A stretch of DNA of 64,000 nucleotides from Utricularia gibba. Its lineage: Eukaryota > Plantae > Magnoliophyta. Location: contig NEEC01000012.1 in the NCBI GenBank assembly GCA_002189035.1, positions 2,542,001 through 2,606,000 on the forward strand, given 5' to 3'. The notes under the pieces were generated by a model. That model saw only the letters and a program-made list of their open reading frames with translations. It was not told where the DNA came from and did not search any database. Below are positions 14,947-59,511 of this stretch, in pieces. Position 1 is the stretch's first letter; every line of letters begins with the position of its first letter. The position numbers were made by a program, and so were the translations under genes.

Positions 14947-16573
14947 TTACTCCTCCACGACAACATGCACTTGCGCGTTTTTCATGCTTCGCTTGTTCCT
15001 GCTATAAGCTCTCGTAAATCTCGCTTTCTTTTCTTGATTTACAGCTTCGTTTGGCGTCTCATGTTTGGGAGATGATACTGGTAACTCGTCATCGGACGAT
15101 GAAGTTGCATCTGCTTTTGGTTGTTGAGTTGTTGGGAGAACTTCTTCGGGTTTTTGATCCTTCGTCTTCCCCCAGATCACTAGGTAGAGCCCCATCACGA
15201 TCACCAAAGCTCCACTCACTCTGCAAAATTTGATTGCTAAAAGGTTAGATACGGTGGGTTTTGATGTTATGGAGTGAATTGTGTATCTGTAGAATACGTA
15301 CTTTCCGACGGTCATTTGCTCGGCGAAGATGAAAGAGCTCAGAATGGCGACGATGACCATGCTGAGAGGGTTGAAGGCGGTCACGAAAACGGGTCCCTTC
15401 TCGTTCATGATGACGCCGGAGAGATAGTAAGTGATGCCGGAAGAGACAATTCCCTGCACAAAATCAGCAGAGACAACAATTTAGGCCTCCCCACCGGAAA
15501 AAATGGTGATTTATGAATCTTGGAAATGTCTGGATTCTTACCCCGTAGACATACGCCAAAAGCTTGGCATCCAATCTGAGGATCCAGATGGCGGTGTTGT
15601 TCCTCTCCACGATGAAGGCGACGACGGTGCCCATCAGCGACCCGAATCCGCAGACCATAGCGGTCAGCGACATGCCGGCGCCGTAAGATTTCAAGGTGAT
15701 CGCCTGAAGAATGTAGAAGAGGGCGTAGCAGAAGCAGCCTGCTCCGATCATGAGAGCGCCCTTGATGGGATCAGGATGGTCATTGGGATTCGCAGAAGCG
15801 TGTGCGTTATTTGGCGCATGAGTCCACGGGAGCCCAATTGTTTGGCCTCTGATCATGGTCATGATCATCGCCCCTCCCAGAGCAACCGCCGTCCCGAGAA
15901 TCTTCGCGTAGGTTGAAGACTTTTTGAAGTTCAGTTTCTCGATTCTGTAGAAAGAGTTTTCCATCTTTAAGCAAGCAGTTCTGTGTAGAAGATCGGCTAA
16001 CGATTTTGATTCAGATTCAATTTCTGAAGCTCACCGGAGAATCCAAGCCATCACGAAAGTGATCGCCGGAATAAGATTGCATAGCGCGGAGGTGACGGTG
16101 GCCGTTGTATACCTCATTCCAGCGTAGAACATGTTCTGCCCGATCACCGGACTGTTCAAAGAGAAGAAACTCAGAACTTCTGCTCATGAACTAAATGAAA
16201 AAAGAAAAAAGAAAAAAAAACCAGAATACTCACTCTAGCAAGCCGAGGAGCAGAATCTTGATGAACACCGTAAGAGTCATCGCCGGTCTAGACTTCCTGC
16301 AGAACCACAAACAACAACCCATTAGCTAATCCAACAACAACAGCAGAAATCCTCTCTGCTCATCCTATTTCCAATTCCAACTAACCTCTCAAAGATGAGG
16401 GCGAAGGGGATGAAAAGGGCAGCTGCGATGCCATTCCTGTACACAGAAAACACATAATGGCTGCTTCCCTGGTTCAACGCCGCCTTCGCGACGATTGCGA
16501 ACCCGGCGCTGCCGAACTGCAGGAAGATGACCCCGAGGTAGGGCCTGATTTTGTTGAGGAACTTGGATGACAT
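14947..16573 (-). CDS. WAT1-related / UMAMIT (MtN21/EamA) transporter; 6 exons
   Basis: PYLGVIFLQFGSAGF..AKAALNQG..HYVFSVYR; AKILGTAVALGGAMIMT; KGPVFVTAFNPL; GLYLVIWGK. Confidence 0.93.
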
Positions 16574-18333: not shown

Positions 18334-19424
18334 TCAGGTGAACTTGCAAGCATCCTTTTTGAACTTGATAGGCTTGTTGCTGGCTGAATCGACGGTCATC
18401 TGGCAAAAAACCCTTCTCCGGTGTGTCGTTCGAACTAGTTTTCCTACGATATCTCCTTTGGATATAAGTTCAAAACTCAATGCTAATGGTACCTGCAGGG
18501 GTCCTCGATAGATGGTAAATTTGAGCCAGCTCCGTACAGGGGAACCTTCGTTCCTTCTATCTGCACCATCACATTCTTGTGGCTTTTTCTTGGTTGGAAG
18601 TAGTTGTGGAACTGTACCATCACTATAGTCAGAACAACTATTGTTGGTTTGTGTGGATTGATATTCAGTTTTTTTTAAAGAAGATACCTTTCCAGTGGCA
18701 ACAACGATCTCGGAATAGACGAGGTCCACAGAAGGTGCGCTGAGATGCATTCCATAGAATGTAGCTGGATTGTATACAGTGATCCTCAATGTTCCGTTAA
18801 TATTCAACATCTTTGTAGGAACTCCTGTGAAGTCTGCGCCTGAGCCAATGTAGAAATTGTTGACAGTGAAGCTCTGCAGAAACCAGGGGAATTGGAATGA
18901 ATTAGTAGTGAATCTTGATCGTTGAGTCACAGAAAAGAATGAAGTTGATAAGTTACCCTGACAGCAATCACAGGCTTGTAGTTTCTTCCAGCGCCCCATA
19001 TGATCAAGCAGAAAACTGTGAACAGCAAGACAAATCCAAGAAAAGCCATCAGAGCTTGACACCTTCTTGTCAACTTTTTCTCCTCTTCATACTCATCATA
19101 GATCCCCTCTTCCATAATCACATCACACTCAGGCCACCCTTTATCATTTCTTTTCCGGCCGCCGTTTTTCCGGCCAGAAGAGGACCTAAAGATGCCGGAG
19201 AATCGGCTGGCCGATGAGTTTCTGGAATGGCGGCCGAATGAAGGGTGTGATGGAGACTCCATGGGACTGTTGAAACTTGGAGTTGCATGCATGGTTGAGG
19301 ACTTATCTCCATCATGAGAATCCCTTGATGGACTCTGCACATAGTACGCCGCTCTCTTTGGAGATCTTGGAGGAGATGATGTAGCTATGCTTGTGACATC
19401 CGACTCAGACTTTGTATGCTGCAT
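18334..19424 (-). CDS. LEA_2 / NDR1-HIN1-like hydroxyproline-rich glycoprotein family membrane protein; 3 exons
   Basis: HTKSESDVTS..SPPRSPKRAAYYVQSPSRDSHDGDK; TM segment; GSGADFTGVPTKML; YNPATFYGMH; GKLVRTTHRRR. Confidence 0.92.
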
Positions 19425-34842: not shown

Positions 34843-37840
34843 TCATCGCCCTTGTACAAGACCGCTGAAGACTTGACTGTTTCCAGCAAGAGTTGCTTCC
34901 CATTCTATGGAGGATAACAAAATCTGGGAGAGTGATATCACCACTTGCTTCATGTTTGGTCTCAGCACTGGATCGCTGTCCACGCACTGCCTTGCCAATA
35001 CAGCCATCTGGGCGCCACAAAATGGTCACATTTCAGGGGATTCTCGCGTAAGAAGGAACAGTTGTGGTTCTGCCTTTGTTTAAAAGGATTACCTTGTAAA
35101 GACAGTCGTGTGGGTATAATCCCAGCAAGTTGGGATCAATGTGGTCTTTCAGGCTGGATATACCAGTTGCGTCTGTTGAGTTCCTCAAAACTGCTACCAT
35201 CTGAAACTTGATCTGCATTAGCTGACTATGAAGAAGAAACATGGTGGTTAGGTATCTGGTAAGGGGAATGGAAGGCTTTACTATGGATGCTAAGGATCGT
35301 CTTTCCGAGCTTCTTGAGATGGCCTCTTCGCCGGAAATAAGCTCGAAAAGCACCACACCAAATGCATAAACATCGCACTTTGTTGTAGCTATACCATCCC
35401 TCAAGTACCTTGGTGATCAGAAGATAAAACTCATGTTTCTTGGGAACAAAAAGTTTCTGATATGGAGAAAAATGTGGAGAGGCATACTCTGGAGCAAGAT
35501 AGCCATATGTTCCAACAACTCTGGTGACGGACTCTTCACCGGTTGTCATTATAAGTTTCGCCATACCGAAGTCTGATATCTGCAAAGTGAATGCAGTCAA
35601 AGTGCAGGAATTGAGTGAACTTTGGTTATATGGAGTTAGTTACCTTTGCTCTAAAACTCCCATCAATGAGAATGTTGCTTGTCTTGATATCCCTATGGAC
35701 GTAGTGAGGTTTCGTATGCTCGTGTATGTACTCCAGGCCTCTAGCAGCATCAAGTGCAATTTGGACCCTCATAATCCATGATAATGATGTATGACCTGTA
35801 GCAGATATGGATGCATATTTCAGTAAACTGCATCAGGAAGAACTGAACTCTTTCTGTAGCTTGTAAAGCGATAGTGTAAGCTGCTTTTGAACACCAAGAA
35901 CTAAAACTGAATCATAAAACATGATAACCCACTGAAAAAGGTGAAAAATCATCACACCTTTGCCTTGATGTTCATGCAGGTGATGCCTGAGTGAACCCTT
36001 TTGAGCGTATTCATATATGAGGAAAAGCTCATCAGGGCTTGCTGCATAACCAATCAACTCTACCTTTCACAAGGAAAAAAAAAAAGGAATAAACATCAGG
36101 TGATGCTCTCTCGAATTCATAAATATCAGTTTTTCAGTCTAACTAGTCACCAGGTTTGTGTGGTGAACTCTGCACAGAACTTTCATCTCTGCCATGAATT
36201 CTTTGGTTTTTGTGGCAGTCATTTTCTTGATAGCAACTTCCTGATCCTGGAGAACAGCATAGTACACCGAGCCATATGTGCCATGTCCCAAAAGATTAGA
36301 ATCTGAGAACCCTTCCGTTGAAGAGAGAATCTCATCAATTGTGAAAACTACTGGTTTCTCCACGTCAAAGACATCAGTCCTTATAACTGCAGAGTAAAGC
36401 AGCTAAAAATTTGAGAACAACAGACAAAACCAGCCACCAGTAACAAGAACATCGCATCAAAAGCAGATCTTGCATAAGCCCATTACATGCTGTATGCAAA
36501 AAGCGAGGCATTTTTCACACCTGCAGGAATGTTCATCTGACGGTTACTAGATTCTCCCTTAGGATGGTTCCTATCTTGTGACCTGCAGCACATGCGTCTT
36601 CCGGAAGCACAGCAAAAACTAGCGTTCCTTAGAATGTGGAATTGATGCAGATTTCTTTTATTCAAGTCTCTATTATGGTTTCCTTCTGATCCTCTGAAGC
36701 AGCCAGACGCTCTCAAGAAAACACATAGAACCACCCCTATAATCAGAACGAAACCAAGAGCCAGGAGTCCAATGATCCACCAAGCATGGTTCTTATGACT
36801 TTCGTGGTTTTCTGAGATTTGACATTAAGCATATGGATATGTTAACACCAGACAGAAATACCTCAAAAGGTGAACAATAAAAATTTTCTTACCTACTGTG
36901 ACATCCACGGATGGTGATGGAGCAGGAACAGGGAGAGTGTCATTTGCAGGATAGCGCTGACCAGGAGCTGAAATCATAGTAGCAATCCAATTATGGTAAA
37001 GTGAGCACTATAAGGCATACTAAGAGACAAAATGCTAATTGTGTGTTTGCCAACTGAAGCAAGAGGAGAATGATCTGAAACTCATAAAAGAATATGGAAC
37101 ATTAGAAGCCATGAAGTCTTCACCAATCCGGCAACCATTTCTAGCAACTTAAGCTACACATGGCATTCACTTTTAGAAGACAATGAAAATGATCAGCAAT
37201 CAGCCATTAAAGCAAGATTACCTGAATCAAGTGGTATGTAGTAAAGCGACCCAATGGTAAAATTATCAGGACCTGGCAGGCTATTAACAGTCTCAATACT
37301 ACTCATACTGACCCCAAAACGGCTAGCCAAAGATGCCACACTGTCTCCATCTTCCATCACATAGCTCATTAGGTAATTCCAAAGCCCATTTGAGCAACCA
37401 CACATTAGCTTCAATGAAACCACTGCCCCCTTCTTAGTCTCCCTTCTAAATTTGTGAGGAAAATAAGCCAGGCCGTGGTAGGAATTTATAACCAGATCGT
37501 ACAAGGAGCCGTTGTCTTGTTTTACAGTCAATGTGGTATTTGTCAAGTATTTGCTAGCTCCAGAAGAACACGAACAATTCTTTCTGATAAAAACATAATC
37601 CCTACCATTCCCTTCATAGCTAATGGCGTCTTGAAGTACATCAAACATGCTCATAATCACAGGGAGCGTCTGCTCTGGAGTGGGCTTAAAAGCTAGAAAA
37701 GAAGTGCATAAACGAGACGTGTCCGTACAGTTCAACGGAGTGAAAATTGTCTCTATAGCTGCTGAGCGAAGAAATAAAACTTCTGCAAACAGAAACAGAA
37801 GAGGAAGGAGAATGAAGCTTCTATAACCTCCATATCCCAT
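34843..37840 (-). CDS. LYK3: LysM receptor-like kinase, AtLYK3-like; multi-exon
   Basis: Signal peptide, [15 protein letters not shown], CxC spacers, [24 protein letters not shown]; kinase [17 protein letters not shown]; C-terminus [21 protein letters not shown]. Confidence 0.95.
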
Positions 37841-40428
37841 TACGCCAAGACGTAGAGCAGCACGATCCGACCGCTTTTTCCCCAACAAAAACTCAGCCTT
37901 GATGTTATGTCAGCGAAGAAACATACGCATCTATGATGGGTCCGGAACAAAAACGAAATCCAGGGTATCCAAGTACAGAATTGGGATCAGCAAACGCCAC
38001 ACCAATAAAAATGGCGTTGTTTAGGTTTCCCGAGAGCACACGGGAACCAACTGGTGACAGAAGAGTGGGAAATCTGGAAAGTGGCAGAAAACTACAACCA
38101 TCACAGTAAAAGGCATCACGCTTACCGCGCACCACAACCATCTACATCCCCCTTTTACTTCACATTTCTGTAAGGAAGACGACAGCTTTCGGGTTCCACT
38201 CTTCATCCGTAAAACTTGACGATACACTACCCACAACAATGTACGTACTGTAAATGCCTTCAGGAGCAACGGAGCTCACAGAGAGCAGCGCATTCCCTCC
38301 ATAAAACGTCATCAACAAACAAAAAAAAAATCTCTCCTTTACCTCACAGCTCGCCGATTCCAGTGTAATTGTCACGTGGTCACCCGATTTGTAGGCATCT
38401 TTAACAGTTGACTTTTGAAAAATATTACCGTCGTTAAACTTTCAAAATCAAAAATTTTACCTTAAACATTTAATATAATATTGTTAATAAATGCTTCTTT
38501 TATTAATTACTGTTGAAGTAATTATTGTGGCGGTTCTGAGTCCAACCGGCCCCTTCGCCGGTTCCGCCGCAAACCGAAGATGGCTTCCGCCGACCCGGTA
38601 GTTAGAAGAACCGCTCATGGAGAAAACGAGGAAATCGCTCGCCCGGCTGACCGGGGTTGTCCGATATCCGGTCAACCAGGTTGAACCGCCGGCTGACGCA
38701 AACAGTAAATAAGCGAAAAAGAAACTTTTTATTTTTAGAAAGCAATATTATTATTTTATAATGGTGGGAAAAAATAACTGAGAAAGTGATGGGTCGTAGA
38801 TTCTAGACCCAAGTGAGTGGGCCCGCAGTCTGCCCTGGAGACAACTGTGAAGGGTATGAGTGACGCAGTGGTCCACAGAGCGAATTACGAGAAAGCCCAT
38901 GGGCCACCGAACTTCAATAAATGACTTCAAAATTGGATTCCTGTAACAACCAAACAGCCTGGAAATTCATGGCTTCTCCCTCCTTTTACATATATTCCAA
39001 TTTTTTTAATTATAAAATAAGATTGGAAATAATAAATGATAATTGAAAATATCCATTCTTTTCAAAATGTACTATCCATTTACTTAAATAAATTAAAAAT
39101 AGAATTAAAGATGATGACAATAAAATTATTTTAATATATTATTAAAGATATATCAAAGTAAAATTATCTTATGTCACATTTAATATTCAAATCTCACCCA
39201 TCACCCCTTCCATTTCATTTCTCAAATTCTAAACATTTTAAATTCCAAAATTTTAATCTCAATTTTTTAAAATCCATGAAACTGATAATGGAATATGATT
39301 TTCTTAATAATTATTAAATTACAAAAATGCTCGAAACAATGCATTTTTTAATTGTACGATATTATTCGCTTTCATAATCTATTTCTCATAATTTTACATT
39401 CTCTAATTCTAAGGAAAATATATCATACAAGATTAGAGAAGATTAATCTATATAAATTATTATTTTGGTTGTTCATAAACAATATTAGATTCACCTAAGG
39501 TATTTACAACCTTATTTGGGGCTCTAAATTCCAGTTAAATATTTTATAATCCTAATTGTTGTGTTAGTTTTTTTATTAAAAATATTTTTTAATAATATTA
39601 TTATTATTACAATGGTCCCTGGGTGGTTGTACTGTACTGTGCCCAGCAAGGGGATGGGCTTTTAAAGAAAGGTCTGAGGCACCATAATTCAAGTGACAGG
39701 GTGACTCTGGAAAATGTAAATAAAATATTATCATTCAAAATAAATATATAAATACATATTTTAAGAATTTTTCAGTGGGCTGTGTTTTGGGTTGATCTCA
39801 TTTGGGCAGGCCCATTCTTTTCAATACAGGGGACCGGCCCAATTTGGACCTCGGGCCCCATGAGAAGCCCAGATACTCTGGGAGAGTAGTGGGCCCTGTA
39901 CGGGGGCCTCCTTTATGGAGCTGTGTCGTAGCGAGTACATCCCCATCATTAGGCATCAGTGAAATTTATTCCATCTTCTGCAAGCACCCACCTTACCCTT
40001 CATTGAATGCACTTAAATTGAGAGGACAAAAAGCTGGAAAGCGAGATGCCAATGGGAGGCCTCGGAGTTTCTATCAGGTGCTGCTGTGAGTAACCTGTGT
40101 TATGGGGTGGCAAAAAGATGGAATTTTTGTTATTCCCATTCGGAAAGATTGGATTTGTATCTCTGGGTTGTGTTCGCCTTCGAGCTGCCAAGTGGTGGTG
40201 AAATGTTGATGGTTTTGATCTGTTCGAGGAAACTTTAAGCCTTTTTTTCAATTTTCATTTGTTTCTGTGATATCCTTTTTGTCGTGGATTGGTGTTCATC
40301 ACACCACGAGGGGTTGTCAGAGAGCCAAAAAATTTTCAAAAAAACAACTTGTTTTTATAAGCAGGTTGTTTGGTTTTGTCTCTGCCGCGCATTTTGGATT
40401 GTGGTTGCTCTTCCTTGCGTTGAGGGAA

Positions 40429-41595
40429 ATGGGAAAGGCTACCATGTGGATTAGAGCTCTCCTTGGAATGAAGAAAGGTAAAGGAAATGGGGAAGATGAT
40501 TCTGCTCTGAGAAAGGAAAAGAAAAGATGGAGTTTCGCAAGGGCTGGTAAGGAAACGGCTGGAAGCCGAATTCCAGGGTACGACGACGACTTCCCCTGGC
40601 GGAGAAGTTATTTTTCTAGCACCCAGAAGGAGCAAACCAAGGATGCTATTGCAGTTGCCGCTGCCGCCGTCGTTCGGGTTACGAGCCAGCGCAGGGGAGC
40701 TACTATCTTCTCCTACGGCAGAGCGCTACGCGCCGCCGTCACGATTCAAACTGTGTTTAGAAGCTATTTAGTGAGTGTCTACAAACAAAAAAAGAAACAC
40801 CTGCTATTTCAAATCCCTCTCCAAAACTCCAATTTTTTTTTCACTTTACAGGCCAGAAAAGCTTTAAGGGCTTTGAAAGGATTAGTGAAACTGCAAGCGC
40901 TTGTAAGAGGATTTCTTGTAAGAAAGCGAGCTGCTGCTACGCTTCATAGCATGCAAGCTCTGTTTCGGGCTCAGGCTGTTGTTCGGGCTCAGAAAAACAG
41001 GGGAAGAAAGTATATTGTAAGAACAGAGGTTTTTTTCCCCTTTAATCCAAACCCAATACAAACGCAGTAATGTTCATTTTTGCAGGGGAATCGCCATGAT
41101 CACCGAGCTGCATCTCGCAGCAAGAGGGTTACTGTTGGATTACATGGCAACCCAGCAATCGACAAAACTCTGAAAGTCGATCCCTGCCGGCCTCGATTTG
41201 CGGACGACCATTGTTACCATACATCGTCACCACTCCGGTGTTTGATACCCGCCCGGTTATCGGTTCCGGAGTACCGGATTCACAGAGATTTCGACTGGGG
41301 GGAGGAACACAAGTGTTCCTCATCTCAGAACACACCGCGGTTTGGGCATGCTTCCTCCCCTGCAAAGAGTTTTTACAGTGAGAGCCTTCCCAGAGCGTAT
41401 CACAACAAGCCTCCGAGTTACATGGCGAATACGCATTCGTTTAACGCAAAACTGAGATCTCAAAGCGCCCCAAGACAACGACATGAAAGGGGACTGAAGG
41501 GCGGGCTTCCATTAATGGCATCAAGAAGCAGCTTCAGTGGGGTTAGGATGCACAGATCTTGTTCCAGGGTCCATGAAGATTCTGGATGTTACTAG
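40429..41595 (+). CDS. IQD: IQ67-domain calmodulin-binding protein (IQD26-like, DUF4005); 3 exons
   Basis: [13 protein letters not shown]; KKRWSF; IQ67 [33 protein letters not shown] with phase-0 intron; [23 protein letters not shown]. Confidence 0.93.
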
Positions 41596-48111: not shown

Positions 48112-48796
48112 AATATGCCGTTAAGAGAACACAAACTGCAATTGCAATACAAACGGCGCAGTTCATCAAATGCCCAAGAAAAAAGGTAAACACGCAAATT
48201 CCACAAATATCACTTTTTAGTCTACGCCATCTAAAATGAAACCAATTTCAGTGAACATCCGGATTCGAAAATCAAGTGGAGAAGAAGCCTTGTTAACATT
48301 AGATTGCAAGATTCACTTCTGTATACCTGAATCATTTTACAGAAAAAAAAATGGGTATGCGGACGTCGGAGAACTACATCTAAACAACTGTTACTTGTTA
48401 GCATCTGCAACCAATTTGAACTTCGGCAGCAGTAAAGGAAAGTCGGGGAAGAGGAATTGAAACCCGTAAGCCACTAGAAAGTTCTGAAACACACGTTAAT
48501 CGTTGCCAATCACCTGCGAATGAAAACACAGAAGCCAATTTTTACCATTACGTCACTTGAGCAAAATCCCGAGCTTTCCAGTCCAACTTTCTTGCCCATT
48601 CAAATAGAATCCAACTTTGTGGCGATTTCGCGATACCCTAGTGTGTTTCCTTAAAAAGATATATATACAAATAGGTATGCATATGTAGTTAGAAAAGAAT
48701 TACTTTTTGAGCATAACTAGCACACGAATTGGCGAATCAGGAACACGTCGCCCCAAGGAAGTGGTTTCAACATTGAAATCAGGAACGGAGGCGGGA

Positions 48797-51625
48797 ATGA
48801 GAGTGAGGAGGAATAGGGGAGGGGGATGGGGAACAACTCTGATTCCTGTGGCCTTCTTTCTTCTACAAGTTGCATTCGCGTTGGCGATCTCTCAGAGCAA
48901 TAGCAGTTCTGATGGGAGAAGAAGAGAAATGAGAGTAGTGGATGATGTGGTGTGGGTAGTGCAGCTCTCTGATCTTCACTTCAGCGTGAATCATCCTGAG
49001 AGAGCCCAGGACTTCATCGACATTGTCGGGCCTACGTTCGGGTTTGTGAAGCCAACTTTGGTCCTTCTCACTGGTGATCTCACAGGTGATTTCTGAATAT
49101 CCATTATTCATGATCTCAATATTGCTCTGTGTTGAACTTTGGATTCTCTGATCTAGAGAACGATTATATTGATAATGGTATTTTACATGTAGCGGCATGG
49201 CAGATATATTCATCTATGAGCGTGAAGGTTACATCTGGTTTAGTCAATGCGTTTTCTTGTGCTTATTAAAAATGTTTCTTTAGTATGTTCTCAATTTGGT
49301 CGTGGATTGAAAGATGAATTGAGTTGTAAATGTGAAGTTTTGTAATGATTAGTTGTGGTTTGGGAATCACCTTGATTGCGTTAGTCTTTTTGTTCGAGCT
49401 AACAATTGAGTTAGCTAAAGATGATGGTTGGGAATCATCTCAGCATTTTGTGTTTGAGTCTGTTTAGAAATTTCTGAATAAAGTGGAATTTAATTTTTCT
49501 ATCTCTTAGATGGTAAAAGCCTGGATATGTTGACCATGAAACAAGACGAAAAGGAGTGGATAGAGTACCGGAAGGTGATGCAAAATGTTGTGAAGAGGAG
49601 TGGACTTGATAAGAGCTCCTTTTATGATGTCAGAGGAAATCATGACAACTTTGGTGTCCCTATAGGAAATGGTTCCTTGGACTTCTTCTCGAGGTATAGC
49701 ATCTCTGGGCAGCTACAAAGAGATGCAAAGGTCAATACCATCACCATTGAGGTATGTGAACTCAAATTGCTGTTGTTATTTGCTGTACAAAAATTAAGAT
49801 CATCTATCATGATTGTTCGTTCACTTTTGAATAACCATTTCACATGTTTTGTAATTTAATGGTTGCGCAGACAAGCAGAAGGAAACTTCTTTTTGTTGGA
49901 TTTGATAGCACATTATATCCTGGATTACGAGGGCCGACGAACCTCTTGGGGCACCCAAATGATGAACTTCTGAATGAAATAGATTCTGAACTATCACAAA
50001 TGGAGTCAGCTGCTATTCCACTCACTAAAGTTTCATTCGGGCATTTTCCACTTTCCTTTTCTGCAGCTTCCGAGTCCGGAAGGTCCCTTAGAGATTTATT
50101 CATCAAACACTCATTGGATGTATATTTATGCGGCCATCTACACACAAAATTTGGTAAAAATCTAAAGAGGTACCATGGCACCTGGCATCCAACTCTACAT
50201 TCCAATGAGTTATTTCAGTTAAATGGTCATCGATTGTCTTCAGAAAATGGCTCTGGTTGCCATGGTAGTGAAGCACGAAATGGTGGTTTTTGGGAGTGGG
50301 AAATGGGAGATTGGAGGAAGAGTCGAGCGATGCGCATTTTGGCTGTTGATGGTGGTCATATTTCATTTACAGATTTTGACTTTAAGTTTGGACCCGAGAG
50401 CATTATTGTAGTGCCAACATTCCCTTTGGACTCGAGATTCTCTTCAGCATCACAAAACTGTAAATCTGACGTTTCTGAGCCTTCCTCCATGAAGTCCATC
50501 AGAGCTTTGGTTTTCTCTGCTTCTCCAATATTATCAGTTTTGGCAAAGATATATGATTCTTCTTCTGGGAGTCATACTGTTGTGTTGGAATCAGTAATGA
50601 CAAAGGCTGCAAGTTCTCATAACAGTCTCTTCGTTGCACCATGGAATATACAAGATTTTGAAGATCCATCTCCTGAAAGATACCTGCTTGAAATAGTAGC
50701 AACTGATATCAGTGGTAAATCAGTTGCCTCTGAACTGAGGCCATTCTCAGTAGCAGGTACTCCTGCAAAGTTCCCCTGGAGATGGAAAGAATTCTTGATG
50801 ATGGGCTGCCAGTGGGATGCCTTATACTATCCAATATTTTGGTTATTCTACTTTTTAGTCCTCCCCATTCTTCTCGTTCCAAGGTTTCTCCTGTCATTCT
50901 CACGGAGGCAGTACACATACAGAGGCTTCAATGCCAATGAAAGCTTCATCAACCGAGCTTTTAGACTATCCATGGAACTCTGCAACATTCAAATCACATG
51001 GTTTGGCATGACTGTTTACGTGTTCTACCTTGTGTTATGCCCATGGTTTTCCGGCCGAACATTTAGTTCCGACGAAGAGCGACTATACATGGTCTACAGA
51101 GGCTGGTTATCAGGATTCAATGATATGAGGAAGCCTCAATACATTGGCTCCCAGATGTCATGGTTGTGGTTTTTCCACACATCTATCTGGTGGTTTTGCC
51201 TGCACTAGTGACAATGGTGGCTCTAGCTGCTGAGAACGGATTATATCGAAGGTACCCTCTTTCATCCTCAAACAAGAAGAACGATGACCACAATATACCT
51301 CCACCCGAATCCTATACAAATTCCATTCACCATCAACGTAGAAGGTGGCAAAGGAAATTTCTTTTGTTGATCTGCTTATCCATTTTCTGGAAGCATTACA
51401 CGGTATATATATATTATGTTCTTTCTTGTACCAATCCCTTTCGATATGCATTTCAAATCCAAGGTCATTGTTAGCATGATTCCTTGTCAATCTGTGGTGT
51501 TGCAGAGCTGTGTAGCGTTGATGAAAGCATACGAGATGAGCCCTTTTGTTCATTTTCCTGTATACTGTTTTGGAGTCCCTGCATTGCTGGTTTACACGAT
51601 CTGGAAAACTGCTGGCGCTCTTTAG
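48797..51625 (+). CDS. Calcineurin-like metallophosphoesterase, TMEM62/At3g03305-like; apparent 1-nt frameshift near 51149
   Basis: QLSDLHFS, TGDLT/DGK, RGNHDNFG, GHFP, YLCGHLH, WEWEMGDWRKSR; C-terminal TM helices continue in another frame (MVVVFPH...). Confidence 0.9.
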
Positions 51626-51887: not shown

Positions 51888-52447
51888 TTACACTTGAAAG
51901 GGCAATGACCATCTTCTGCCATTAACATCTCCAACTTCAGCGCTGCTGGAGCTTCCGCCATTGATTCCCTTCCTCTCCATGTAAGCATAGTAATTCAAGA
52001 AGAAGGCAAGCGTGAGCACAACCCATTCCAGACAGAACATCAGGACGCAGAGCCCCCCTGCGAGTTTCAGAATCACCACACCATCTTCCTCCCTCACGTA
52101 CGACTTCAAGTGCCCCAGGAAGTCAGAGGGCCTCGTGAATATCAGGACAGACACGGATCCCTGAAAGATGGCAGTTAGAACAGTAGCCACCATGTGGGCG
52201 CCGTAGAATTTCCCGGCGGAGGATGCGGACCGTGAGGCGGCGGCGCAGCCGGAGATGGCGCCGGCGATTGTGATTGCGTGGAGAAGGATCAGGAGGAAGC
52301 CGACGAGGGAGGGAAGAGGCGGAGAGAAAGGGTGAGGAAGATGCAGCTTGAGGCGGCGCCCAGGAGGACGTAGTTCGTGAGGATGAATACTTTGTGGGTG
52401 TGAGGATGAGAGCACTCTCCGCCGGAGAAGTCGATCGACAAACCCAT
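51888..52447 (-). CDS. Left (inverted) copy of small multi-pass membrane protein gene (AT5G16250/AT3G02640-like); 1-nt frameshift at 52311-52313 as assembled
   Basis: Reverse complement matches 52917-53414 almost perfectly; one C is missing from a C4 run; distinct C-terminal tail (SSSAEVGDVNGRRWSLPFQV*). Could be a pseudogene or an assembly error. Confidence 0.8.
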
Positions 52448-52560
52448 TTTCCGATGCAAATATTTGAAAGAGCTTTAAATTCTAATATATCTGAAACTCT
52501 GTATTGAGCTCGCGGAAGAAGAGCCGGGCGTTATATAATACTCAGGGCAGAGTTTCAGAA

Positions 52561-52800
52561 TCAACGGTCACATTTCAGATCATGAAAGTAATCCTCAACG
52601 GCTACTTCACGCCGTGTCCTGATGAAGATCGCGCGTGTCCCCGAGTCGTCCCCACTCCATTTCCCAATTCTAAAAATCAAATGTAGACAAAAAGGGAAAC
52701 AAAATCGAGTGAAGATGTGGGGACACGGCGACGCGCCACGAACTAGCCGTTGCGACACTTCCTTTCAAAAAATCTCAACGGGCGGAAATATGACCGTTGC
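52561..52800. promoter_or_regulatory. Bidirectional promoter with five MSA (AACGG-core) elements
   Basis: TCAACGGT 52561, CTCAACGGCT 52594, AGCCGTTG 52745, CTCAACGGG 52774, GACCGTTG 52792. Confidence 0.75.
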
Positions 52801-52916
52801 CGTCTGAAACTCTTCCCCCTCCTGTCGTGAATTTACCCAACCTGCTCCTCCTCTCCACCTTCACAACTCGGAGAAAAAAAGCTCTTTTTTCTACTGTTTT
52901 TGCATCCGAAGAAGAA

Positions 52917-53480
52917 ATGGGTTTGTCGATCGACTTCTCCGGCGGAGAGTGCTCTCATCCTCACACCCACAAAGTATTCATCCTCACGAACTACGTCCTC
53001 CTGGGCGCCGCCTCAAGCTGCATCTTCCTCACCCTTTCTCTCCGCCTCTTCCCCTCCCTCGTCGGCTTCCTCCTGATCCTTCTCCACGCAATCACAATCG
53101 CCGGCGCCATCTCCGGCTGCGCCGCCGCCTCACGGTCCGCATCCTCCGCCGGGAAATTCTACGGCGCCCACATGGTGGCTACTGTTCTAACTGCCATCTT
53201 TCAGGGATCCGTGTCTGTCCTGATATTCACGAGGCCCTCTGACTTCCTGGGGCACTTGAAGTCGTACGTGAGGGAGGAAGATGGTGTGGTGATTCTGAAA
53301 CTCGCAGGGGGGCTCTGCGTCCTGATGTTCTGTCTGGAATGGGTTGTGCTCACGCTTGCCTTCTTCTTGAATTACTATGCTTACATGGAGAGGAAGGGGA
53401 TCAATGGCGGAAGCACCAGGAGTGCAAAGGTGGGAGATGAAGAGGATATCAAGAACTGGCCATGGCCTTTTCAGGTCTAA
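52917..53480 (+). CDS. Small multi-pass membrane protein (AT5G16250/AT3G02640-like), intact right copy, intronless
   Basis: HKVFILTNYVLLGAASSCIFLTLSLRL; YGAHMVATVLTAIFQGSVSVLIFTR; LKSYVREEDG.VILKL.GGL; WPWPFQV*. Confidence 0.9.
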   Translation: MGLSIDFSGGECSHPHTHKVFILTNYVLLGAASSCIFLTLSLRLFPSLVGFLLILLHAITIAGAISGCAAASRSASSAGKFYGAHMVATVLTAIFQGSVSVLIFTRPSDFLGHLKSYVREEDGVVILKLAGGLCVLMFCLEWVVLTLAFFLNYYAYMERKGINGGSTRSAKVGDEEDIKNWPWPFQV

Positions 53481-57000: not shown

Positions 57001-58629
57001 TTTTTTTAAGGGCTTCCTGCGATTGATATATCATTGCAGTGAATCTTAAAAAGACACAGAAATATACAATGACGAAAAGAAACATGGTAACTCTAAACAG
57101 GAGGCTTTTTTCTAAGATGTGCGCGTTCTATGTCAGAATAGAGAGGACTTTAAAGAAAAGGGATTGTTTTTCTACAATATTTATCTTCTCAGTCAAAAAT
57201 TCCTTCTCAATGTCAATTATAACAAAGAAAAGGATTATTTTCCAGTTATGCAGATAGCTAAATTTTATCAATGATTAGGCTAGGCAATTAGCATAAAAAT
57301 TAGGCTACTTAAATAAAAATCAGTAAATGAAAAAATGGAGATAGCCTAAACTAGTAATACATGCAATTTCATAGAAGGACTAAAAGAAAGCCTAAAGATT
57401 GATTTACTCCAGGTGAAAGATAAGAGAAATAAAAGGTAATGGTTTATTCTGCATGATACATATGTGTTAGCTAGTGACACAATGGACTGTTAGTAACTGA
57501 TCAGAACAGCCCCAAGGCACTTAAGCTAATTACAGTTTTCATACATGCAGAATAGTGAATAACCAAGCACCTCACTTATGGCAATTTTGCAGAAGGAAAT
57601 ACATGCATATGTGCGAGAACATATCACCATTATTAAAGTAGATTCACCTGTTCTTTCATCTTATCCTGAAAGGTTGACGGTAACATGTTTGGAAATAGTT
57701 TTAGAAACACGGGAAGCAAGAATTCCATGAAAGGAACTATAATGAATACAGCGAAAGGACCCAGCCTGAAAATATCAGATGCTGTTCTTGTGAGCTGCTG
57801 TCTCTCTCTCCTCGAAAGTGTCTTCCCTCTAGCCACCTTTGATAAGAGCCTCACGCATATTCTAGTGTCAGCCCACAGTAGCTTTGTTCCAAGCCAGTAG
57901 TGCTTTAATGTATTCATAAACTCATCTTTCCAGTGAATCAATTTTTTGGCCCAATCTTCTCTGTAATAAGATCAAATCATTAAGCGGCAAGGAGATACAA
58001 ATCCTTGAATTAAAATTTTGATATAGATTTATAACCTGCTCATAGAGGCTACAGCTCTTAAGGCTGGACCGATTCCTAAAATCATAGCCCAAACCTTCTT
58101 CAGGGTAGAAGCAAGAACCCCTTCTGAGAATCTTGCAGCTTCTTCGATTTGGCTTTTGCCTTGGCTTTGACAGAACCCAAATCTTCAACTGCAAGATCAC
58201 ACTCTTCCGGAGAAGGTTCTTTCTTCACCTTAACAACTGGTTCTTCCTTATCATCACTACCCCCTAACTTCGGCTGTGCTGCTGCCGTTGAAAAATAATG
58301 TACATCTCTCGACGAACTAAATTCCCATCTAAAAAAATCCCTAGTAACTCCAACCCCATAATGTGAAAAAGGAACCCGAGTAAACCAAGACCGAATTGAC
58401 TTGGAATCAAAGCTCGTTGTGCAGCCGGTTTTGCTACACATCGGTCATCGTCCTTCCTCACGTGTTTAGAGCTCAGGGGCTGAGTCTCTTTAGAATCCCA
58501 GCTCCGCGAATGCTCATTCTCTGACAACTCCACATTCTTAAAACCCAAAAAATTTTCAACAAGGCAGCGGGACGGGTTAACAGAATCAACCAGGGCCTTT
58601 TTCCTCCTAAAAATTGCTCTCGACGCCAT
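54047..58629 (-). CDS. LETM1: LETM1-like mitochondrial cation/proton exchanger with EF-hand; multi-exon; two apparent 1-nt frameshifts in exon 1
   Basis: MASRAIFRRK; SPEECDLAVE; HYWLGTKLLWAD..LSRRERQQLTRT..PNMLPSTFQDK; DYDGKVTPEEVAAAA; GKILVEDIIKL. Confidence 0.93.
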
Positions 58630-59511
58630 TGGAAATTGCTTCCGTTTCAACTAAGATAGCATATCCCTGAAAACCACAACCACAGCCTACTCTCATTTCG
58701 AGAAAAAAATACATCAGACATCAATCGAAGGAGCGTAACTGAACAAATACACGAAATAATTCTGAAACTCATCATCCAATACCACCGCTAAACATTCTCA
58801 CAAAAACGCAATCCATTTAAACTTCTTCACTGCAACCGTTAAGAAATGATTCAGCTAGAGCATGAAACAGCGAAGCGAATGGATTACCAAATTCACAGAA
58901 CAGGAAACCGACGTCAAAAACCAAAAACTCCACAGCTGGAAACGCCACTTCAAAAATCGAAAAACGAACCTCGCGCAGATCAATCAGCCCAAGAATTATG
59001 TCGCAGTCGGAGTGTTTCAGTTCTGTCCTGATGCTTGTAGAACAAGTCCAATTTCCCCTGCAGACTGAATGCAGGTTTATAACTTCCCTTGCCGAAAGCC
59101 CACTATCACCTTTCCTAGGGCGTGCTGTATCCAATCAAATTCATTTTTAACAATTTTTAGCAATAAAAAACATATTTCTTAGTTTTTATATTTTCCTATC
59201 TCCTTTGCTCATAATAATAAAAAAAACTCTTTTTTTAATTTTTTATTGTCACGTAATTTTAATTAATAAATTCTTTGAAATAAAAAAGTAGATAGATTTA
59301 TTTTTAATCAAATAAAAACGTATTTTAATATTTTGCATATATTTTATTTTTTTCTACCCAAAAAATCATTAATAAAATAAATATGTTAGATATGTGACGT
59401 TAGATATTTTCATATATGAAAGCTGGAGATCTTTTTAATATCACAATTAAAGAATCCATGAAGGAGAAGAATCAGAAGTTTTGCTTTTAAGGATATACAC
59501 ACGATAAGGAG

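What the first reader, a model, noticed from the sequence alone, without database searches (positions are those of the whole stretch)
51888..53480. Gene palindrome: head-to-head duplicate with a sharply bounded, near-identical coding core
Seen: 52447-51951 (minus) and 52917-53414 (plus) are identical over about 498 bp apart from one synonymous change (51966/53399) and one homopolymer indel. The 5'UTRs and last 22 or so codons are clearly diverged (SSSAEVGDVNGRRWSLPFQV vs TRSAKVGDEEDIKNWPWPFQV). Old flanks around a fresh core is the pattern expected from arm-to-arm gene conversion across a 469-bp spacer. Inference: concerted evolution keeps the TM core uniform while the cytosolic tails diversify, in an uncharacterised mitotic membrane-protein family.
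Basis: partly seen in the sequence, partly recalled or inferred. Interest (0 to 1): 0.75.

Follow-up and report, generated by a model that had tools for sequence, protein, structure and literature searches.

The report
Gene conversion between mirrored plant genes
Two head-to-head copies of a small plant cell-division membrane-protein gene are an old mirror duplication in which one copy recently overwrote about 500 bases of the other; this is a clear but ordinary case of gene conversion, and the single-base "indel" is a frameshift that is probably an assembly error.

Summary
Arms 51951-52449 (-) and 52915-53414 (+) are identical except for one 1-nt indel and one synonymous change. The last ~21 codons, the 5' leaders and the 3' flanks are strongly diverged.

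The genes are single-exon Lamiales members of the plant four-pass membrane family named SLIDE1-4 / MERCY1 in Arabidopsis. That family marks dividing cells, so it is not wholly uncharacterised.

The 465-bp "spacer" is a decayed palindrome of two promoter copies. Each half keeps MSA-type CAACGG cores: five in 465 bp against 19 in the rest of the window.

Core dS is 0.008 and tail dS about 1. This step means a recent ~0.5-kb arm-to-arm gene conversion inside an old inverted duplication.

- All 10 tail amino-acid differences are derived in the minus copy. The plus tail keeps the family motif, so the tails are not both diversifying.
- The indel is a -1 frameshift in a C4 run of the minus coding sequence. 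The neighbouring TMEM62-like gene has the same lesion, and scan notes report it genome-wide, so it is probably an assembly error. A true pseudogene remains possible.

The scan has already found comparable conversion tracts elsewhere in this genome. Long-term concerted evolution is not shown.

The parts
52917..53480 (+). Plus copy: intact single-exon coding sequence, 187 aa plus stop, of a SLIDE/MERCY1-family four-helix membrane protein
   Evidence: Open reading frame. It has 499 homologues; the best are Lamiales, at 82-87% identity over the full length. It aligns end to end with 37 homologues and keeps every invariant column.
51888..52447 (-). Minus copy: the same gene head-to-head, read in two pieces (codons 1-45 at 52313-52447; codon 47 to stop at 51888-52310) because of a -1 frameshift
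   Evidence: tblastn finds the two pieces in different frames.
52915..53414 (+). Conversion tract, plus arm (from 2 nt upstream of the ATG to codon 166). The minimal tract ends at 53398 if the GGG/GGA difference at 53399 is an old one
51951..52449 (-). Conversion tract, minus arm
52311..52313 (-). G3 run on the + strand (C3 in the gene's sense), one base shorter than the C4 run at 53051-53054 in the plus arm; this shifts the frame after codon 45
   Evidence: Homologues read L-F-P-S-L here, as the plus arm does.
53415..53480 (+). Conserved C-terminal tail of the plus copy (family motif K-V-x-D-E-E-D-x-K-x-W-P-W-P-F-Q-V) plus stop
   Evidence: The AF2 model shows this region as low-confidence, probably disordered.
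51888..51950 (-). Diverged tail of the minus copy. It carries 10 derived replacements and a 1-codon deletion; the frame and stop position are retained
52450..52914 (.). Intergenic region: a decayed palindrome made of two diverged promoter and 5' leader copies, centred near 52680
   Evidence: The mirror alignment scores 22, against 2.2 +/- 1.3 for shuffles (z = 15) and 6 for the same-orientation control.
52545..52576 (.). Best-conserved mirrored promoter block, left half. It contains a CAACGG core and a TCTGAAACTCT motif about 100-130 nt upstream of the minus ATG
   Evidence: blastn gives 85% identity over 33 nt to 52785-52817.
52785..52817 (.). Best-conserved mirrored promoter block, right half
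52562..52601 (.). Two CAACGG (MSA-core) motifs at 52562-52567 and 52596-52601, lying 115-150 nt upstream of the minus-copy ATG
52747..52799 (.). Three CAACGG (MSA-core) motifs at 52747-52752 (-), 52776-52781 (+) and 52794-52799 (-), lying 118-170 nt upstream of the plus-copy ATG
   Evidence: The cluster of 5 in 465 bp against 19 in the other 63.5 kb gives Poisson p = 4e-7.

Best explanation
An old inverted (head-to-head) duplication copied a whole SLIDE/MERCY1-family gene together with its MSA-containing G2/M-type promoter. The two promoters, the 5' leaders, the last ~21 codons and the 3' flanks then diverged to near saturation.

Recently a non-crossover recombination event took place. Most likely a double-strand break in one arm was repaired from the other arm on the same chromatid or its sister (SDSA-type intrachromosomal gene conversion). 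It copied about 0.5 kb from one copy onto the other. The copied stretch runs from just upstream of the ATG to the end of the fourth helix, and it ends on both sides where homology had already decayed: a 5-nt indel at -3, and the diverged tail.

The plus copy is the constrained, ancestral-type gene. The minus copy has a tail under relaxed constraint. Because the shared core keeps every family-invariant residue, the donor was probably the plus copy.

The 1-nt deletion in the C4 run of the minus copy is most likely a consensus error of the assembly (about 75%) and less likely a real mutation.

Shown: the palindrome, the identity step, the polarity of the tail changes, the MSA cluster and the frameshift in the assembled sequence. 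Inferred: the repair mechanism, the donor direction, the cell-cycle expression and the error status of the frameshift.
For: Identity step. The core has 1 synonymous difference in 125 synonymous sites (dS 0.008) and the tail has 9.5 in 16.7 (dS about 1.07). About 71 synonymous differences would be expected in the core at the tail rate (P = 4e-44). Fisher p = 4e-21.

Old palindrome. The tails align codon for codon and the stop sits at the same place. The spacer halves are mirror-homologous at z = 15, and a 33-nt block is 85% identical. No homology is left beyond the stop codons.

Polarity. All 10 of 10 tail replacements are derived in the minus copy.

Family identity.; PMC8092560 (four-pass membrane proteins, M-phase, puncta at the division site); PMC8825464 (marker of dividing cells).

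Promoter. Five CAACGG cores lie in 465 bp. MSA/AACGG motifs lie near transcription start sites and vary in number and orientation (PMC10905365).

Frameshift as error. The neighbouring TMEM62-like gene has a -1 shift at ggctccc (51146-51152), proved by the Pfam TMEM62_C profile. Profile positions 1-116 match in one frame up to nt 51151, and positions 116-213 match in the next frame from nt 51148. A probable further -1 shift sits at a G4 run in the LETM1-like exon 1. Many first-reader notes describe the same signature elsewhere in this genome (unchecked leads).
Against: Only the assembled sequence was available: no reads, no orthologous DNA and no expression data.

The tail dS rests on about 17 synonymous sites, so the age of the duplication is only roughly 'dS of at least 0.4'.

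If the homopolymer error were strictly context-driven, both arms should carry it, since they have the same sequence, but only one does. The longer G6 run at 53307 is correct in both arms. Within this window beta-tubulin, TIC20 and other long open reading frames are intact, so the local error rate is not extreme.

The degenerate tail fits a genuine pseudogene equally well.

Donor direction is inferred, not shown.
Confidence: 0.75

Rival explanations
1. Long-term concerted evolution with functional tail divergence. Both copies are active genes. Recurrent arm-to-arm conversion has kept the membrane core uniform for a long time, while selection lets or drives the C-terminal tail of one copy to change, giving a trafficking or interaction variant.
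For: The minus tail keeps its reading frame, its stop position and the terminal P-F-Q-V despite dS of about 1. The minus promoter half keeps MSA cores and a TATA-like box. The frameshift may be an assembly error. Salvia miltiorrhiza has two consecutively numbered loci of the same clade whose proteins are 188/189 identical. If that pair is orthologous, this is the 'more alike within than between species' pattern.
Against: A single conversion explains everything seen. The minus tail lost residues conserved in at least 95% of 37 homologues and the acidic D-E-E-D cluster, and no homologue shares its tail. Most annotated Lamiales show no adjacent pair, and the two Salvia divinorum paralogues lie on different contigs. 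So the S. miltiorrhiza pair may be an independent young duplication.
Confidence: 0.15
2. The minus copy is a true pseudogene. The frameshift is real and the tail has long drifted neutrally. Its core looks fresh only because the functional plus copy overwrote it, and the 1-nt deletion arose, or survived, afterwards.
For: The frameshift is present in the assembled sequence. All tail replacements are on the minus lineage. Only one of two identical arms carries the deletion, and the G6 run is intact in both.
Against: The time since conversion is very short, with 0-1 substitutions in 2 x 500 bp, so a real indel in that interval is a priori unlikely. The lesion has exactly the -1-in-a-G/C-run form seen in a neighbouring conserved gene and reported across the genome. 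The tail kept an open frame.
Confidence: 0.2
3. Assembly artefact. The near-identity of the arms, or the palindrome itself, was produced by collapse, a fold-back chimera or polishing.
For: The assembly shows consensus errors. Palindromes are a known failure mode of long-read libraries (established knowledge).
Against: A fold-back artefact gives a perfect palindrome with no centre. Here there is a 465-bp unique centre that is diverged but homologous, the tails are diverged but homologous, and the flanking genes are different (TMEM62-like on the left). Allelic mis-joins would leave the flanks near-identical too. Polishing cannot turn copies about 40% diverged into identical ones over exactly the coding core.
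Confidence: 0.04
4. There is no old palindrome. A recent inverted duplication of only the core landed next to an unrelated sequence.
For: None beyond the sharp boundaries.
Against: The tails align in frame to a shared stop codon. The promoter halves share mirrored blocks, including the MSA core.
Confidence: 0.02

Closest known systems
[quoted passage not shown]
   Same: It is a small head-to-head gene pair a few hundred bp apart. A tract of complete identity is bounded by diverged flanks, which is the GENECONV-type signature. The tract ends where homology is interrupted (Walsh's 'terminator mutations', as cited in that review).
   Different: The organism and the gene family differ. Here the tract covers almost the whole coding sequence but stops short of the C-terminal tail, and one copy's tail is degenerate.
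Arm-to-arm gene conversion in large palindromes such as those of the human Y chromosome (my own knowledge, not checked here)
   Same: The geometry is mirror-image, and the arms are kept or made identical by non-crossover recombination across a unique spacer.
   Different: Those arms are 9 kb to over 1 Mb long and identical along their whole length, and their maintenance has been shown across species. Here there is a 0.5-kb tract inside a 1.6-kb decayed palindrome, and only one event is demonstrable.
Other inverted paralogue pairs in this same genome noted by the scan (invertase pair s1-231603, RNR1 pair s1-197785, and others)
   Same: They show the same pattern of an identical core inside an older diverged inverted duplication. 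The follow-ups judged them ordinary gene conversion.
   Different: The genes differ and the tracts there are longer (2-4 kb). I did not re-examine them.
Arabidopsis SLIDE1-4 (At3g02640, At5g16250, At5g36710, At5g36800) / MERCY1 (PMC8092560, PMC8825464)
   Same: The protein family is the same: about 185-190 aa, four membrane helices and a conserved acidic W-P-W-P-F-Q-V tail. It is associated with dividing cells.
   Different: The function of the copies in this window is untested. PMC8092560 links the family to M-phase, whereas PMC8825464 reports a G1 peak from a database, so the timing is not settled.
Salvia miltiorrhiza LOC131016958 / LOC131016959
   Same: It is an adjacent pair of the same Lamiales clade, with proteins 188/189 identical. 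The single difference lies in the tail.
   Different: Both tails are intact there. Orientation, DNA divergence and orthology to this pair are unknown.

Membership tests
SLIDE / MERCY1 (AT3G02640 / AT5G16250) plant membrane-protein family | Full-length sequence homology to family members | tested here: met
   One search found 499 hits, the best at E = 1e-102 and 82-87% identity over 99-100% of the query. One hit is named 'like AT5G16250'. No Pfam model exists for the family.
SLIDE / MERCY1 (AT3G02640 / AT5G16250) plant membrane-protein family | Four membrane-spanning helices | tested here: met
   The AF2 model has four long helices at 15-43, 47-72, 78-105 and 120-162 (weak model, pLDDT 61). Hydropathy maxima overlap them. 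PMC8092560 calls the family four-pass.
SLIDE / MERCY1 (AT3G02640 / AT5G16250) plant membrane-protein family | Conserved C-terminal motif (K-V-x-D/E-E-D-L-K-x-W/L-P-W-P-F-Q-V) | tested here: met
   The plus copy meets it. The minus copy does not: K171E, K179R, P182S and W183L, and the acidic cluster is lost.
SLIDE / MERCY1 (AT3G02640 / AT5G16250) plant membrane-protein family | Expression in dividing cells and localisation at the division site | not testable with these tools
   Only indirect evidence: five MSA-type CAACGG cores in the shared 465-bp promoter region.
Interlocus gene-conversion tract | The tract is far less diverged than homologous flanks, including at synonymous sites | tested here: met
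   dS is 0.008 in the core against about 1.07 in the tail. P = 4e-44 for at most 1 synonymous difference at the tail rate.
Interlocus gene-conversion tract | The flanks on both sides are truly homologous, meaning an older duplication and not a new partial copy | tested here: met
   3' side: the tails align codon for codon to a shared stop. 5' side: the promoter halves are mirror-homologous, z = 15.
Interlocus gene-conversion tract | Tree conflict between the tract and the flanks when orthologues are added | not testable with these tools
No plant genome collection was otherwise available.
Interlocus gene-conversion tract | Both arms confirmed in single sequencing reads | not testable with these tools
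   No read data.
Long-term concerted evolution (recurrent conversion) | Paralogues more alike within each of several species than orthologues are between species, at an orthologous locus | tested here: inconclusive
   The S. miltiorrhiza adjacent pair is 188/189 identical, and between species identity is about 87%. Orthology of the pairs is unknown, and most other Lamiales show no adjacent pair.
Processed or unitary pseudogene (minus copy) | A disabling lesion that is real, together with neutral evolution | tested here: inconclusive
   The frameshift is present in the assembly, but it has the form of a recurrent assembly error. The tail shows relaxed constraint on the minus lineage only, yet it keeps an open frame.

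The most novel reading that the evidence does not exclude
The head-to-head SLIDE/MERCY1 pair could be an anciently retained Lamiales palindrome whose membrane core is kept uniform by recurrent arm-to-arm conversion. The near-identical adjacent pair in Salvia miltiorrhiza would then be the same locus. One copy would have evolved a different C-terminal sorting tail under a shared bidirectional MSA promoter, giving two co-expressed cytokinesis vesicle proteins that differ only in their tails.
Probability: 0.1. Interest if true: 0.5.

Novelty: new member of a known kind. Interest (0 to 1): 0.25.

Why it matters
It is a clean, well-bounded example of gene conversion between inverted paralogues in a plant. 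It shows how conversion can make an old duplicate look young over its coding core. It also warns that dating or annotating such pairs from the coding sequence alone is misleading.

For annotation, the locus should carry one intact SLIDE/MERCY1-type gene plus a second copy whose frameshift needs read-level checking. The -1 lesions in neighbouring genes add to the evidence that this assembly loses bases in G/C runs.

It does not open a new question. The scan already holds several similar cases from this genome.

Tried and rejected
The other locus collections hold only viral, metagenome and prokaryote DNA, so no orthologous plant DNA could be examined.
- Pfam on the protein: no family.
- Strict 11-nt MSA consensus scan: not enriched window-wide. 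The 6-nt core is what clusters.
- Structure: the AF2 model was weak (pLDDT 61, pTM 0.40), so I ran no fold search, because matches would be meaningless.
- Other apparent frameshift candidates from my insertion scan: those at 15454 and 18958-18997 turned out to be ordinary GT-AG introns. Beta-tubulin is intact. The kinase split at about 35413-35481 fits a short intron.
- Extended homology beyond the stop codons: none found.
- Additional family copies in the window: none.
- Fold-back or haplotype mis-join and partial-duplication explanations: rejected because the centre and the tails are homologous but diverged.
- The minus copy was never read through its frameshift. Its two pieces were used separately by reference, and the codon at the break was left out of the dN/dS counts.
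- Nothing in the window looks human. No spliced model was needed because both genes are single-exon.

Full report
OBSERVATION. The window holds exactly one long repeat, an inverted one. Its two pieces abut: 52311-52449 / 52915-53053 at 100% and 51926-52313 / 53052-53439 at 98%. They are separated only by a 1-nt length difference.

The alignments show identity from 2 nt upstream of each ATG (52449 / 52915) down to 51951 / 53414. There are two exceptions. One is a C4 run (53051-53054) facing a 3-base run (52311-52313). The other is a synonymous GGG/GGA change at 53399 / 51966, which sits 15 nt before the divergence starts at 53415. It could therefore equally be the first 'old' difference and not a post-conversion change.

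Across the coding alignment, 2 differences fall in the first 498 columns and 23 in the last 68 (Fisher p = 4e-21). A broken-stick test on the longest clean run gives p = 1.4e-9.

WHAT THE GENES ARE. The plus copy (52917-53480) is an intact 187-aa single-exon open reading frame. It has no Pfam family but 499 homologues. All are plant proteins; the best are Lamiales (Salvia, Erythranthe, Rehmannia) at 82-87% identity over the full length, and one hit is annotated 'like AT5G16250'. So the window is a nuclear region of a Lamiales plant that is not itself in the protein database.

The family is not nameless. Ho et al. 2021 (PMC8092560) named AT3G02640, AT5G16250, AT5G36710 and AT5G36800 as SLIDE1-4. 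[quoted passage not shown] Apelt et al. (PMC8825464) named AT5G16250 MERCY1, a marker of dividing cells in root and shoot. They cite a G1 peak from a database, so the exact phase is not settled.

An AlphaFold model built on 39 sequences is weak (pLDDT 61, pTM 0.40). It shows four long helices (15-43, 47-72, 78-105, 120-162) and a low-confidence tail from residue 165. Hydropathy agrees. The identical tract therefore covers all four helices and ends where the unstructured tail begins. I ran no fold search on so weak a model.

AN OLD PALINDROME. The tails still align codon for codon, with one codon deleted in the minus copy, and they end at the same stop.

The 465-bp 'spacer' is not unique filler. 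Its left half, reverse-complemented, aligns to its right half with score 22, against 2.2 +/- 1.3 for shuffles (z = 15) and 6 for the same-orientation control. blastn finds a mirrored 33-nt block at 85% identity (52545-52576 / 52785-52817). Beyond the stop codons no homology is detectable. The original inverted duplication thus took the whole gene with its promoter, right up to a centre near 52680, and it has since decayed everywhere except the coding core.

THE STEP. By the Nei-Gojobori method, the core (165 codons, with the codon at the frameshift left out) has 1 synonymous and 0 non-synonymous differences (dS 0.008). The tail (codons 161-187) has 9.5 synonymous differences in 16.7 sites (dS about 1.07) and dN 0.24. 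At the tail's rate about 71 synonymous differences would be expected in the core, and the chance of seeing at most one is 4e-44.

Selection on the protein cannot hold synonymous sites identical. The core was therefore recently copied from one arm to the other, which is gene conversion. The tract is 484-500 bp long. Its 5' end abuts a 5-nt indel at position -3 and its 3' end abuts the diverged tail, so it stops where homology had already been lost. The tail dS rests on few sites, and I take it only as 'old, dS of at least about 0.4'.

THE TAILS ARE NOT BOTH DIVERGING. In an alignment with 37 homologues, every one of the 10 positions where the two tails differ has the plus-copy residue as the commoner one among relatives (10:0, binomial p = 0.002). 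The minus copy has lost K171, K179 and P182, which are conserved in at least 95% of homologues, as well as W183 and the acidic D-E-E-D cluster. The plus tail almost matches that of the homologue closest to it in the tail, P0005.

So one tail is conserved and the other is under relaxed constraint, or possibly new selection. Because the shared core keeps all invariant family residues, the donor was probably the constrained plus copy. That is inference.

THE INDEL IS A FRAMESHIFT. The missing base lies in codons 45-46. The minus copy as assembled reads L-F-P-P-S-S-A-S-S-stop and would give a 54-aa product.

Two readings are possible. A genuine pseudogene is supported by the degenerate tail. It is also supported by the fact that only one of two identical arms has the lesion, while the longer G6 run at 53307 is correct in both.

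An assembly error has more support:
(i) The TMEM62-like gene 1.1 kb to the left has a -1 shift at ggctccc (51146-51152). Pfam TMEM62_C profile positions 1-116 match one frame up to nt 51151, and positions 116-213 match the next frame from nt 51148, which leaves no room for an intron.
(ii) Exon 1 of the LETM1-like gene steps through frames 0, 1 and 2. The second step is at a G4 run near 58117-58120, after which the conserved-looking sequence continues. This one is ORF-level evidence only.
(iii) Some 95 first-reader notes on other pieces of this genome describe 7-12 such '-1 in a G/C run' frameshifts per window. These are unchecked leads. I tested the claim only in this window.
(iv) So little time has passed since the conversion (0-1 substitutions) that a real indel in that interval is unlikely a priori.

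I put the error reading at about 75%.

PROMOTER. Five CAACGG motifs lie in the 465 bp between the genes, two within 115-150 nt of the minus ATG and three within 118-170 nt of the plus ATG. The remaining 63.5 kb holds 19 (Poisson p = 4e-7). AACGG is the core of the MSA element bound by MYB3R factors. Such motifs lie near transcription starts, in variable number and orientation (PMC10905365). One core sits inside the best-conserved mirrored block. The strict 11-nt consensus is not enriched.

This fits G2/M-type control of both copies, each from its own promoter half. Expression itself is untested.

From cluster membership, Salvia miltiorrhiza has two consecutively numbered loci, LOC131016958 and LOC131016959, on one contig. 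Their proteins are 188/189 identical, and the single difference lies in the tail.

That is either the same old pair under concerted evolution or an independent young duplication. Other annotated Lamiales show no adjacent pair, and the two Salvia divinorum paralogues are on different contigs, which leans towards independent events. Long-term concerted evolution is therefore possible but not shown.

MECHANISM. The most likely course is as follows. A break in one arm was repaired by strand invasion into the inverted partner and synthesis-dependent annealing without crossover. A crossover would simply have flipped the centre. Heteroduplex extension stopped at the indel near the ATG and at the diverged tail. 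This is textbook intrachromosomal conversion between close inverted repeats.

The C. elegans hsp16 inverted modules, separated by 416 bp, are a classical parallel (PMC3966223). Large palindromes such as those of the human Y chromosome are the large-scale analogue (my own knowledge).

CONTEXT AND ARTEFACT CHECK. The window is ordinary gene-dense plant DNA. It carries bHLH, beta-tubulin, S17, Nup35-like, LysM receptor kinase, IQ-domain, TIC20, calreticulin, DUF565, TMEM62-like and LETM1-like genes.

A fold-back chimera or a haplotype mis-join would give a centre-less perfect palindrome or near-identical flanks. Here the centre and the tails are homologous but about 40-50% diverged, and the outer flanks are unrelated. 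I give artefact about 4%.

VERDICT. The feature is real, and it is gene conversion inside an old inverted duplication. This is a new instance of a well-known process, and the scan has already found the same pattern on other DNA of this genome (invertase, RNR1 and others). Interest is low to moderate.

Noticed in passing
window 51146-51152 (TMEM62-like gene, + strand, exons about 48689-51622): There is a -1 frameshift at ggctccc inside the TMEM62 C-terminal domain. The Pfam profile continues seamlessly from one frame into the next with no room for an intron. It is the same kind of lesion as in the minus arm, so it probably reflects a base lost from a G/C run in the assembly.
   Followed up: yes
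window 57636-58650 (LETM1-like gene, - strand): Exon 1 runs through frames 0, 1 and 2 (58267-58650, 58103-58444, 58032-58184). The second shift is at a G4 run near 58117-58120, after which a conserved-looking stretch leads into the LETM1 ribosome-binding domain. These are probably one or two more -1 homopolymer errors, but they are not verified against a profile or homologues.
   Followed up: partly
Salvia miltiorrhiza proteins P0129 / P0134 (LOC131016958 / LOC131016959): This is an adjacent pair of the same family and clade in another Lamiales species, with proteins 188/189 identical. In the alignment their N-terminal half resembles one Salvia paralogue (P0001) and their C-terminal half resembles the other (P0133, P0006), which hints at conversion there too. 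The DNA was not obtainable.
   Followed up: partly
window 40219-41592 (+): Two open segments of an IQ-domain gene (40219-41067 and 41071-41592) are in the same frame and split by a single stop codon. This may be an intron or a nonsense change.
   Followed up: no
window 52531-52540: A TATA-like TTATATAAT sits about 85-90 nt upstream of the minus-copy ATG. The plus-copy promoter half has no counterpart at the mirrored position, so the two promoter halves may differ in core-promoter type.
   Followed up: no
window 52917-53414: The converted core has GC3 of 0.75 and GC of 0.57, against about 0.41 for the window and 0.46 for the spacer. This could reflect GC-biased conversion or simply the usual 5' GC richness of plant genes. 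It could not be compared with orthologue DNA.
   Followed up: no
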